This document shows positions 9,585 through 10,250 of a DNA stretch of 64,000 bases, one piece after another. The stretch lies in IMG/VR virus record IMGVR_UViG_3300042558_004148, positions 248,001-312,000 of that record; one strand, 5' to 3'. The first letter of the stretch is position 1. Each line of letters starts with the position of its first letter. Made by a program: the position numbers and the translations under genes. Under the pieces are notes generated by a model. It made no database searches, was not told where the DNA came from, and saw nothing but the letters and a program-made list of their open reading frames with translations.

Positions 9585-10250
9585 TATCATAAAAACGGCC
9601 TGGTTGGTAGACAGGGAGGAGTATTTAATGTAATCTGCTCAATGTGAGGAAATAACTGTCTGTAGGCATACAACAGTCCAAACGATAAACCATTATGATA
9701 CAATTAGCAATGGAGGTAAACGCGAGATGAAGCGTTGGAGAATAGGGGCTCATGGATTTGAGATTCCCGCCTGGCTACCCATCAGGACTTTATAAGATAA
9801 TTCCATCCACCTATAAGAAACCATTGCTTTTTAAAATATATTTAGTTAATAAATATTTTGGGGAAAGGATTAATTAACTAAACAGGTTAAACATTGAATA
9901 CCTTTGTAAATTATAGTTGGGCATTTCACAGATGAGTGTTTAGATGAGTTTGAATCTCAGATTGTCCTCAAAGTTAAGAAGTTGAAAGACTCTTTTGCTA
10001 TAGGTTTACATAAAGATACTATCAGTAATGGTAGATGTGTTGTTCCCTTGAGAAAGGAATACGATTTGGCAAGCTTGGTGCAGGAGTTTTGATACTGACA
10101 AGACAACACAAATGAGTTCTCAGCAAGTGCTTCGAAAAGCTATGCAGTTTTAAAACTCCTATGGAGCCTTACAAACTAGAAGTACGTGACCCTACTCTTA
10201 TACAAGCCCCGTAACTGATAACTCGGTAGGCTATAAGAAAGAGGGTGCTA
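9585..10250 (+). ncRNA. large (~670 nt) multi-domain RNA candidate, GOLLD/ROOL size class
   Basis: ORF-free; several long-range helices and a pseudoknot; boxA-like GTTCTTTGAAAT upstream; adjacent to tRNA-like genes. Confidence 0.55.

What the first reader, a model, noticed from the sequence alone, without database searches (positions are those of the whole stretch)
9585..10250. ~670 nt ORF-free, pseudoknotted RNA candidate next to tRNA-like genes
Seen: helices 9585-9592/9693-9700, 9706-9713/9821-9828 and 10036-10043/10103-10110; a crossing 9 bp helix AGGAGTTTT 10082-10090 / AAAACTCCT 10152-10160 (pseudoknot); a long 3' hairpin 10190-10245. Knowledge: GOLLD and ROOL are large ornate RNAs found beside tRNA genes in phages. 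I cannot tell by eye whether this is a member of either family or a new class.
Basis: partly seen in the sequence, partly recalled or inferred. Interest (0 to 1): 0.68.

Follow-up and report, generated by a model that had tools for sequence, protein, structure and literature searches.

The report
Modular structured RNAs beside phage tRNAs
The 670-base gene-free stretch is not one giant RNA but a row of separately evolving, transcribed, folded RNAs in the tRNA-gene region of a huge lake phage; one belongs to a widespread phage RNA family that matches no catalogued RNA family.

Summary
The window is part of a freshwater huge phage (near-identical IMG/VR records of 343-373 kb). Comparison with relatives splits it into independent modules. 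M1 (9585-9700) has 4 homologs and 9 compensatory pairs. M2 (9706-9828) is shared with the 735-kb phage LR756501, and its closing helix covaries. A lineage-specific hairpin lies at 9841-9882. A ~370-nt multi-domain RNA lies at 9884-10252.

The core of that RNA (helix 10036-43/10103-10, a hairpin with a conserved 9-nt loop, and a pseudoknot 10048-54/10117-23) occurs exactly in at least 120 IMG/VR contigs. It is often present in several copies between tRNA genes. It occurs in only 6 MAG contigs among 185,579 species genomes.

Rfam 15 gives no match (GOLLD, ROOL, OLE, RNase P, ribozymes), although the same scan finds GOLLD in a related contig.

Contigs from four metatranscriptome studies lie on these non-coding blocks and almost never on the flanking ORFs.

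Most likely these are stable RNAs cut out of tRNA-array transcripts. Their function is unknown.

The parts
9541..9575 (+). Promoter-like site: TTTG at 9541-44, 19 nt, then the 13-nt motif AGTTCTTTGAAAT (9563-75).
   Evidence: The 13-mer recurs exactly at 8733-45, 7 nt before the upstream RNA. It also occurs in LR756501, upstream of GOLLD in L049 and upstream of some core copies. The match to the Bacteroidota -33/-7 promoter type is my inference from memory of that consensus. An RNA contig starts at 9584.
9585..9700 (+). Module M1: a 116-nt four-way-junction RNA. It has a closing helix 9585-92/9693-9700, an invariant hairpin 9599-9615 with a tRNA D-loop-like loop, a variable middle hairpin, and a long hairpin 9655-9677.
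   Evidence: Four homologs: window, L024:1025-1137, L145:7721-7848 and L100:7714-7827(-). On three of them, 21 pairs are 100% paired, 9 pairs change on both sides, and 0 of 500 shuffles reach this. The L100 closing helix is a fourth sequence.
9706..9828 (+). Module M2: a 123-nt RNA. It has P1 9706-13/9821-28, P1b 9714-17/9809-12, P3 9746-52/9759-68, and P4 9770-74/9782-86 with a 7-nt loop. Long unpaired stretches are invariant.
   Evidence: It is shared with LR756501 (L002:1440-1567) and L018:11318-11443(-), at 56-61 bits with a model built from window+L024. 93.9% of cells are paired, and 6 pairs change on both sides (4 of 8 in P1). There is a single copy per record.
9841..9882 (+). Lineage-specific hairpin (10-bp stem 9841-50/9873-82).
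   Evidence: It is conserved in L024 with one compensatory change (A-U to U-A). I did not see it upstream of type A RNAs in other contigs.
9884..10252 (+). Type A large RNA, about 369 nt, a member of a widespread phage family. Its parts are described in the rows that follow.
   Evidence: The same order of conserved blocks is seen in about 38 distinct copies from other contigs. Family length is 209-452 nt, median 323. The blocks are 100% identical to L024, while the inserts V1 (9912-10003) and H3 (10060-10102) share no similarity.
9884..10034 (+). 5' domain of the type A RNA. Hairpin Ha is 9884-9903 (loop UAAACAUUGAAU). Stem 9905-11/10004-10 encloses the variable insert V1. Hairpin H0 is 10019-10034 with an A-GNRA-U loop.
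   Evidence: The H0 stem covaries (CTATC/GGTAG, CATAC/GTATG, CACAT/ATGTG, CTAAT/ATTAG). Mean pairing is 4.1 of 5, against 2.4 when strands are re-paired between copies. In one RNA contig a 17-nt hairpin replaces the V1 stem and its insert (9905-10010) (joint 9904>10011).
10036..10123 (+). Conserved core. S1 is 10036-43/10103-10. H2 is 10044-58, with loop CUUGAGAAA at 10047-55. H3 is a variable hairpin at 10060-10102. A pseudoknot joins 10048-54 to 10117-23.
   Evidence: CM R2 gives 149 hits. S1+H2 are 98% paired, with 4 compensatory cells. Pseudoknot: copy L107:1386-1477(-) changes two loop positions together with their partners, and C-to-U variants keep G-U pairs.
10127..10185 (+). Helix P5 (10127-33/10179-85), which encloses insert X (10134-78).
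   Evidence: P5 is present in most type A copies, with different sequences beyond a GUAG/CUAC base (GTGATATA/TATATCAC, TAGTAGTAA/TTACTACTA, and window GTGCTTC/GAAGTAC). In L024, insert X sits inside the P6 loop instead.
10188..10252 (+).
   Evidence: P6 recurs in about 30 type A copies with variable loop inserts and compensatory variants (CCTT..AAGG, TCATTA/TAATGA). Homology with relatives L010-L014 starts only at 10249.

Best explanation
Window 9585-10250 lies in the tRNA-gene region of a freshwater huge phage. The host is probably Bacteroidota; this is an inference. The region encodes, on the + strand, a tandem of independent structured RNA genes or modules. These are M1, M2, a hairpin, and a ~369-nt multi-domain 'type A' RNA built around a pseudoknotted three-way-junction core.

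The modules are mobile building blocks of phage tRNA arrays. The core also occurs as a short 'type B' form, 80-130 nt long, wedged between tRNA genes a few nucleotides from their ends.

Most likely mechanism (inferred, about 50% among the mechanisms I considered): the modules are co-transcribed with tRNA and tRNA-like genes from array promoters. The tRNA-processing nucleases, RNase P at the next tRNA's 5' end and 3' trimming of the previous one, set them free. They then accumulate as stable RNAs, and their invariant loops and pseudoknot bind a conserved partner in trans. The partner could be a protein of tRNA metabolism or translation, another RNA, or copies of the RNA itself.

Shown: modularity, conservation, covariation, presence in RNA libraries, and absence from known families.

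Inferred: co-transcription, the processing route, and trans action.
For: Identity and context:
- The window is G000, an IMG/VR virus record, and has identical 343-373 kb relatives.
- Runs that hold it are lake-water metagenomes.
- Relatives carry dense tRNA arrays at this locus. The loci with the core hold 0.63 tRNA per kb.

Modularity:
- M2 occurs without M1 in L018.
- M1 occurs without M2 in L145 and L100, each directly abutting a tRNA-like gene.
- R1 and R3 find no or one further copy in 0.9 Mb of arrays, while R2 finds 149.

Structure: covariation counts are. Between the window and L024, blocks of 89-100% identity alternate with fully replaced inserts.

Strand: G-U pairs occur in M2 P4 and in S1 variants, and the flanking tRNAs are on the same strand.

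Expression:
- Of 27 listed contig pieces from 4 metatranscriptome studies, 24 lie on the non-coding or tRNA-like third of 7000-12900 and 3 lie on ORFs.
- Near-identical pieces cover 9584-9832 (1 mismatch), 9869-10032, 9892-9988 and 10032-10206, and these include lineage-specific inserts.

Independent genes: some type A copies end in a terminator-like hairpin plus a T-run right after the pseudoknot strand and have no tRNA downstream. This favours a trans-acting product.

Phage restriction: at least 120 viral stretches, against 6 MAG contigs in 185,579 species genomes.
Against: - No RNA ends, strand or processing sites were measured. Only assembled contigs were available, and their ends may reflect assembly breaks at repeats.
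- RNA libraries can contain DNA. The nearly empty ORF bins are the only control.
- Because the core is shared by many phages, coverage of 10005-10130 cannot be assigned to this phage alone.
- Covariation in S1, H2 and the pseudoknot rests on a handful of sequences. The main collection was fished with an exact 22-mer, which forces those positions to be invariant.
- M1 and M2 rest on 4 sequences each.
- MFE z-scores are weak (-1.0 to -2.3).
- The tight spacing of type B copies to tRNA ends would also fit a purely cis-acting role.
- No partner is known.
Confidence: 0.7

Rival explanations
1. The modules, above all the type B core, act in cis on the tRNA array. They could be self-cleaving ribozymes or nuclease-guiding or insulating spacers that define tRNA ends or protect precursors. 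The released RNA would then be a by-product.
For: Type B copies start 3-10 nt after a tRNA 3' end and finish 5-10 nt before the next tRNA 5' end. 32 of 122 cores have a same-strand tRNA start within 150 nt. There are several copies per array. The loop and pseudoknot nucleotides are invariant, as in ribozyme cores. Precedent: HDV-like theta ribozymes sit downstream of phage tRNAs (PMC10879173).
Against: Type A copies are free-standing, some with their own terminator and no downstream tRNA. The strand order (S1-H2-H3-S1'-tail) does not fit the HDV fold, and the junction has almost no unpaired conserved nucleotides, unlike a hammerhead (inspection). No Rfam ribozyme family matches at E<=10. No cleavage site can be seen in contig data.
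Confidence: 0.2
2. A single ~670-nt ornate RNA related to GOLLD, ROOL or OLE.
For: The context is the same: a phage, beside tRNAs, ORF-free and with many helices. A true GOLLD lies in the same kind of array in L049. One RNA contig spans M1 and M2 together (9584-9832), so adjacent modules may share a primary transcript.
Against: No GOLLD, ROOL or OLE match appears at gathering score or at E<=10, even when 266-427 nt are searched alone. The L049 GOLLD shares no block with this region. The modules occur separately in relatives. The only long-range crossing helix proposed is not conserved.
Confidence: 0.04
3. Neutral or decaying sequence: relics of tRNA genes, spacer DNA, or unannotated small ORFs. 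A further variant is a 5' leader that regulates the 68-aa gene at 10261.
For: M1 carries a tRNA D-arm-like hairpin. Relatives L010-L014 have tRNA-like arrays at this position. Whole-region folding energy is no better than shuffles.
Against: Compensatory changes are present. Blocks are 100% conserved beside replaced inserts. The core is exactly conserved in at least 120 contigs. RNA contigs lie on these blocks. Frame-breaking indels rule out coding. In L024 and many other contigs the same 3' hairpin is followed by a tRNA-like gene or by unrelated genes, not the 68-aa ORF.
Confidence: 0.04

Closest known systems
GOLLD RNA (Rfam RF02032)
   Same: Large, multi-domain, with variable peripheral stems. 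Encoded by lake phages beside tRNA genes. Function unknown. It co-occurs with the core motif in contig L049.
   Different: There is no sequence or structure match and no shared blocks. The type A RNA is shorter (209-452 nt). Its core also exists as a ~100-nt stand-alone spacer between tRNAs.
ROOL RNA (listed in Rfam) and OLE RNA
   Same: Ornate RNAs of unknown function. ROOL is often found in prophages near tRNAs (PMC5737381). GOLLD, ROOL and OLE form RNA-only multimers (bioRxiv 10.1101/2024.12.08.627333).
   Different: Nothing matches in the scan of all 4227 Rfam families. Multimerisation was not tested here.
Phage T4 stable RNAs C and D (species 1 and 2) in the T4 tRNA cluster (from my own knowledge, not checked here)
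   Same: Small stable RNAs of unknown function. They are encoded among phage tRNA genes, co-transcribed with them and released by tRNA-processing enzymes. This is the model I propose.
   Different: No sequence comparison was made. The T4 RNAs are not known to carry this pseudoknotted core or to be repeated within arrays.
Theta (minimal HDV-like) ribozymes next to phage tRNAs (PMC10879173)
   Same: Short conserved structured RNAs placed directly beside tRNA genes of phages, including phages with suppressor tRNAs. The window also carries a CUA-anticodon tRNA-like gene.
   Different: The order of strands is different, there is no HDV-family match, and the element is longer with a variable hairpin. 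Catalysis is untested.
Flavivirus exoribonuclease-resistant RNAs (topology only, from my own knowledge)
   Same: A three-way junction in which a hairpin loop pairs with sequence just 3' of the closing helix.
   Different: There is no homology. It belongs to a different kingdom of hosts and enzymes. This is a lead for a test of nuclease resistance, not a classification.
tRNA and tRNA-like RNAs (RF00005; bacterial Y RNA-like YrlA)
   Same: M1 has a four-way junction, and its invariant hairpin loop reads like a tRNA D-loop. M2 P4 and the type B hairpin H4 are 5-bp stems with 7-nt loops.
   Different: There is no RF00005 or YrlA match in 9585-10250 at E<=10. There is no T-arm and no CCA-proximal acceptor geometry.

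Membership tests
GOLLD (RF02032) | Match to the curated covariance model (gathering score 150 bits). | tested here: not met
   No match at gathering score in the whole window, and none at E<=10 in 8500-12500, 9575-9840 or 9836-10262. Positive control: 252 bits in L049:3785-4200(-).
ROOL and OLE (Rfam models) | Match to the curated covariance models. | tested here: not met
   The same scans cover all 4227 Rfam 15 families and give nothing above noise.
Bacterial RNase P RNA (RF00010) | Match to the model, including the P4 pseudoknot and the CR-I and CR-V blocks. | tested here: not met
   By eye, M2 blocks recalled CR-V and the P16 region of E. coli M1 RNA. That was a lead from memory. RF00010 finds nothing in the 125.8-kb record at E<=10, while it finds 11 of 14 control genomes. 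No partner for a P4 helix was found.
tRNA (RF00005) / tmRNA | Cloverleaf with a T-arm and anticodon arm; for tmRNA, a tag reading frame. | tested here: not met
   ARAGORN and RF00005 find nothing inside 9585-10250. They do find tRNA-like genes on both sides.
Self-cleaving ribozymes (hammerhead, HDV-like/theta, twister, pistol, hatchet) | Family-specific fold and conserved core; cleavage activity. | tested here: inconclusive
   No Rfam ribozyme family matches. The strand order does not fit HDV or hammerhead (inspection). Activity is not testable with these tools, so a new ribozyme class is not excluded.
Phage tRNA-array core motif (defined here) | S1 helix UGUGUUGU/ACAACACA enclosing hairpin H2 with loop CUUGAGAAA and a variable hairpin H3. 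| tested here: met
   Window 10034-10130 scores 72.1 bits (E 2.8e-12) with CM R2 built from 65 copies. The window itself was in the seed.
Phage tRNA-array core motif (defined here) | UUCUCA 3' of S1, complementary to the H2 loop (pseudoknot or kissing loop). | tested here: met
   Window 10048-54 pairs with 10117-23 over 7 bp. The element is present in type A and type B copies. There are two compensatory changes in L107.
Type A large RNA (defined here) | The order Ha - V1 stem - H0 (GNRA) - core - P5 - P6 - GGGUGCUAA. | tested here: met
   All blocks are present in this order at 9884-10252. The length of 369 nt falls within the family range of 209-452 nt.

The most novel reading that the evidence does not exclude
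The pseudoknotted three-way-junction core is a new catalytic or self-assembling RNA. One possibility is a new class of self-cleaving or tRNA-processing ribozyme that punctuates phage tRNA arrays. The other is a unit that builds RNA-only multimers through its loop-loop pairing, as GOLLD and ROOL do. The H2-loop/UUCUCA contact could be intermolecular. M1 and M2 would be further new classes from the same toolbox.
Probability: 0.15. Interest if true: 0.9.

Novelty: new variant of a known kind. Interest (0 to 1): 0.7.

Why it matters
Phage tRNA arrays are usually annotated as tRNAs plus spacers. Here the 'spacers' are conserved, folded and abundant RNAs.

One element is exactly conserved over 22 nt in at least 120 viral contigs, ranging from about 5 kb fragments to more than 360 kb genomes. 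It matches no Rfam family, and I found no paper that holds its sequence.

This adds at least three RNA classes to the small set of enigmatic tRNA-associated phage RNAs (GOLLD, ROOL, T4 RNAs C and D). It shows that they are shuffled as cassettes. It also offers a short core of about 100 nt that can be tested at the bench for cleavage, nuclease resistance, multimerisation or protein binding.

It further warns that ORF-free stretches in huge-phage genomes may hold several unrelated RNA genes rather than one.

Tried and rejected
- One large RNA: rejected, because the modules occur apart in relatives.
- GOLLD, ROOL, OLE and any other Rfam family: no match.
- RNase P: a by-eye resemblance of M2 to CR-V and P16 was not borne out.
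- tmRNA or tRNA inside the region: none.
- Hidden ORFs under TAG=Q or table 4: none on the + strand. A 133-aa minus-strand frame appears only with three TAG read-throughs and overlaps the 68-aa gene; I disregarded it.
- Whole-region thermodynamic signal: none.
- Exact-pattern scans for M2 blocks in IMG/VR found only the phage's own lineage. The metagenome scan gave 3 true and 4 chance hits.
- M2 P2 hairpin (9719-36): it is not kept in the LR756501 clade, so I do not claim it.
- M1: two mutually exclusive pairings of the invariant GGUUGGUAGA stretch are possible, a local D-like hairpin or a long-range helix with UAUAAACCA. I could not decide between them.
- Regex-anchored covariation counts for P5, P6 and Ha were noisy. 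I report only the offset-optimised comparison, which is a modest signal.
- Flanking proteins give no functional hint: an Fpg-like glycosylase, DUF2452, and otherwise no family.
- Literature: no paper holds the core sequence. The supplements of the 10,006-csRNA catalogue (PMC10690425) are not held, so an overlap with that catalogue cannot be excluded.
- MAFFT could not register the covarying closing helices of M2, so I used a CM-fitted alignment. That leans towards the model structure.

Full report
WHERE THE WINDOW COMES FROM. The window is bases 30863-94862 of a 125.8-kb IMG/VR virus record, with estimated completeness 54%. Three IMG/VR records of 343-373 kb carry 100%-identical copies of the two flanking proteins, so this is a huge phage. 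Sequencing runs that hold the stretch are lake-water metagenomes. GC content is about 35%. In relatives that share the 68-aa gene at 10261-10467 at about 90% identity (L010-L014), the same locus is a dense tRNA array.

THE OBSERVATION. Region 9560-10260 has no ORF longer than 50 aa. Because a tRNA-like gene with anticodon CUA lies at 8654-8727, I also listed ORFs with TAG=Q and with table 4. Nothing opens on the + strand, and I claim no code change.

There are 8 exact 8-mer complements, against 2.1 +/- 1.9 in shuffles. However, 15 of 91 other tiles of this AT-rich window do as well. The whole region folds no better than shuffles, with z = -0.03.

No Rfam 15 family matches, either at gathering score or at E<=10, even when the two halves are searched alone.

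HOMOLOGS SPLIT THE REGION INTO MODULES. A blastn search of phage records found a 40-nt match to LR756501, the 735-kb uncultured phage. A pattern scan of metagenome contigs found three true relatives. L019 and L024 are one phage that aligns to window 8583-10179 at 82%. L018 is a relative of LR756501.

The window/L024 alignment is a mosaic. Blocks of 89-100% identity alternate with inserts that share nothing. Indels inside the small frames are not multiples of three.

M1 (9585-9700).
- Homologs are L024, L145 (found by pattern) and L100 (found with model R3).
- On three sequences, 21 pairs are 100% paired and 9 pairs change on both sides. None of 500 shuffles and no slid register comes close.
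- The closing helix has four different sequences. The long 3' hairpin has three.
- A middle hairpin is kept with unrelated sequences.
- An invariant stretch reads like a tRNA D-arm, but it can also pair with the 3' tail. I could not decide between these pairings.
- In L145 and L100, M1 directly abuts a tRNA-like gene, and M2 is absent.

M2 (9706-9828).
- A model built from window+L024 finds LR756501 and L018 at 56-61 bits, and nothing else in the records searched.
- 93.9% of cells are paired. Four of eight P1 pairs, one P1b pair and one P3 pair change on both sides.
- Long unpaired stretches are identical between phages whose flanks share no DNA similarity.
- In LR756501, M2 ends 5 nt before a tRNA-Ile. 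L018 has M2 without M1.
- A resemblance to RNase P blocks that I recalled from memory failed the test.

THE 3' 369 nt (9884-10252). The 22-mer at 10036-10057 occurs exactly in at least 120 IMG/VR stretches. It occurs in only 6 contigs, all from MAGs, among one genome for each of 185,579 species. A covariance model of 65 copies finds 149 matches in 1.27 Mb of fetched loci.

The common core has four parts:
- helix S1;
- hairpin H2 with a 9-nt conserved loop;
- a variable hairpin H3, whose stretch between H2 and the S1 3' strand spans 24-207 nt;
- just 3' of S1, UUCUCA, which is complementary to the H2 loop.

S1 and H2 are 98% paired. Variation is mostly wobble-compatible, with four compensatory cells. 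One divergent copy changes two loop positions together with their partners in the pseudoknot.

The core comes in two forms. Type B (65 distinct copies) ends in a 5-bp hairpin that presents UUCUCA in a 7-nt loop, and it sits between tRNA genes a few nucleotides from their ends. Type A (39 copies, including the window) is embedded in a larger RNA of 209-452 nt. That RNA has a 5' hairpin with a conserved loop, a stem carrying a variable insert, a GNRA hairpin whose stem covaries, helices P5 and P6 with variable inserts, and a conserved 3' end. Some type A copies carry a terminator-like hairpin right after the pseudoknot strand.

A relative with X has another H3 (L034). In L024, X sits inside the P6 loop. 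That pairing is therefore fortuitous.

EXPRESSION. Contigs assembled from four metatranscriptomes of four studies (freshwater and estuary) were laid on 7000-12900. Of the 27 listed pieces, 24 lie on the non-coding or tRNA-like third of the stretch and 3 lie on ORFs. Most ORF bins are empty.

Pieces nearly identical to the window cover 9584-9832 (a contig that begins at 9584, with 1 mismatch), 9620-9769, 9869-10032, 9892-9988 and 10032-10206. They include inserts specific to this lineage.

Joints in other contigs replace V1 or H3 with other sequences, which shows the same modular variation at the RNA level.

Contigs give no strand, ends or levels, and RNA libraries may hold DNA. This is good evidence of presence in RNA preparations, but it is not proof of discrete transcripts.

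INTERPRETATION. The region is a string of independent RNA genes or modules inserted in a phage tRNA array. It is not one ornate RNA, and it is not GOLLD, ROOL or OLE. A real GOLLD was found by the same tool in the related contig L049 and shares no block with this region.

I consider release by tRNA-processing enzymes and action as stable trans-acting RNAs the most likely mechanism. Three observations support this:
- type A copies can be free-standing genes;
- the RNAs are prominent in RNA libraries;
- the most conserved nucleotides are loops and a pseudoknot rather than junction strands.

A cis role in array processing, including a new ribozyme, remains a serious rival. Function is not established for any module.

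NOVELTY. I found no Rfam family and no paper containing the core sequence. A 2023 catalogue of 10,006 candidate viral RNAs (PMC10690425) could not be checked because its supplements are not held. Prior listing without a name therefore cannot be excluded.

Noticed in passing
window 10477-10645, 11150-11280, 11425-11512, 11633-11699; arrays in L013, L014 and L145: These are tRNA-Leu-like genes with a constant frame. The 5' part is AGTCAGGTGGCGGAATTGGTAGACGC and the 3' part is a canonical T-arm plus acceptor. In place of, or inside, the anticodon arm they carry inserts ranging from under 20 to about 100 nt. Default ARAGORN misses them and its intron mode calls them. RNA contigs join the same 5' and 3' parts through many different inserts. 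The inserts are too short for group I introns. Their nature is unknown.
   Followed up: partly
window 8654-8727: A tRNA-like gene with anticodon CUA, which would read amber codons. It scores 25.4 bits, below the gathering score, and is called only by ARAGORN at a relaxed threshold. It is conserved in L024, with changes on both strands of the D-arm helix. This may point to TAG recoding. I did not test the coding genes for in-frame TAG.
   Followed up: no
window 8748-8970: A second ORF-free structured RNA candidate, with closing helix AGTAAGA/TCTTACT. It is 92% identical to L024. RNA contigs from two runs lie on it. One contig joins 8966 back to 8748 through a 24-nt hairpin linker, which suggests either tandem copies in a relative or a circular form. 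There is no Rfam match, and an exact 22-mer is found only in the phage's own lineage.
   Followed up: partly
window 8733-8745 and 9563-9575; L002:1779-1791 and about 2230; L049 about 4650-4662(-); L038, L069: The motif AGTTCTTTGAAAT, or a close variant, lies a few to about 25 nt upstream of RNA genes in unrelated phages: the two window RNAs, tRNAs, GOLLD and core copies. It looks like a Bacteroidota-type -7 promoter element, which fits a Bacteroidota host. In the window scan the two exact copies stand out, but matches with up to 2 mismatches are at chance level.
   Followed up: partly
L049:3785-4200 (-): A bona fide GOLLD RNA (252 bits) lies in a tRNA array that also carries the core motif at L049:6739-6820.
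   Followed up: partly
window 11281-11424 and 11513-11632: These are further ORF-free stretches between tRNA-like genes. The first (11281-11424) is covered by near-identical RNA contigs (11255-11396, 11254-11404), and 11253-11368 is 91% identical to L145:8319-8434. No listed contig piece lies on 11513-11632. They are probably more RNA modules.
   Followed up: no
L002:1200-1345 (LR756501): The ORF that ends just upstream of M1'/M2 in the 735-kb phage has a C-terminus that, read by eye, resembles ribosomal protein L7/L12. I ran no search on it.
   Followed up: no
window 55477-55551 and 55655-55753: A second small tRNA cluster. It holds a tRNA-Ile with anticodon AAU, and a 99-nt tRNA whose length exceeds the 71-position model, which ARAGORN in intron mode calls tRNA-Thr(GGU) with a 6-nt insert.
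   Followed up: no
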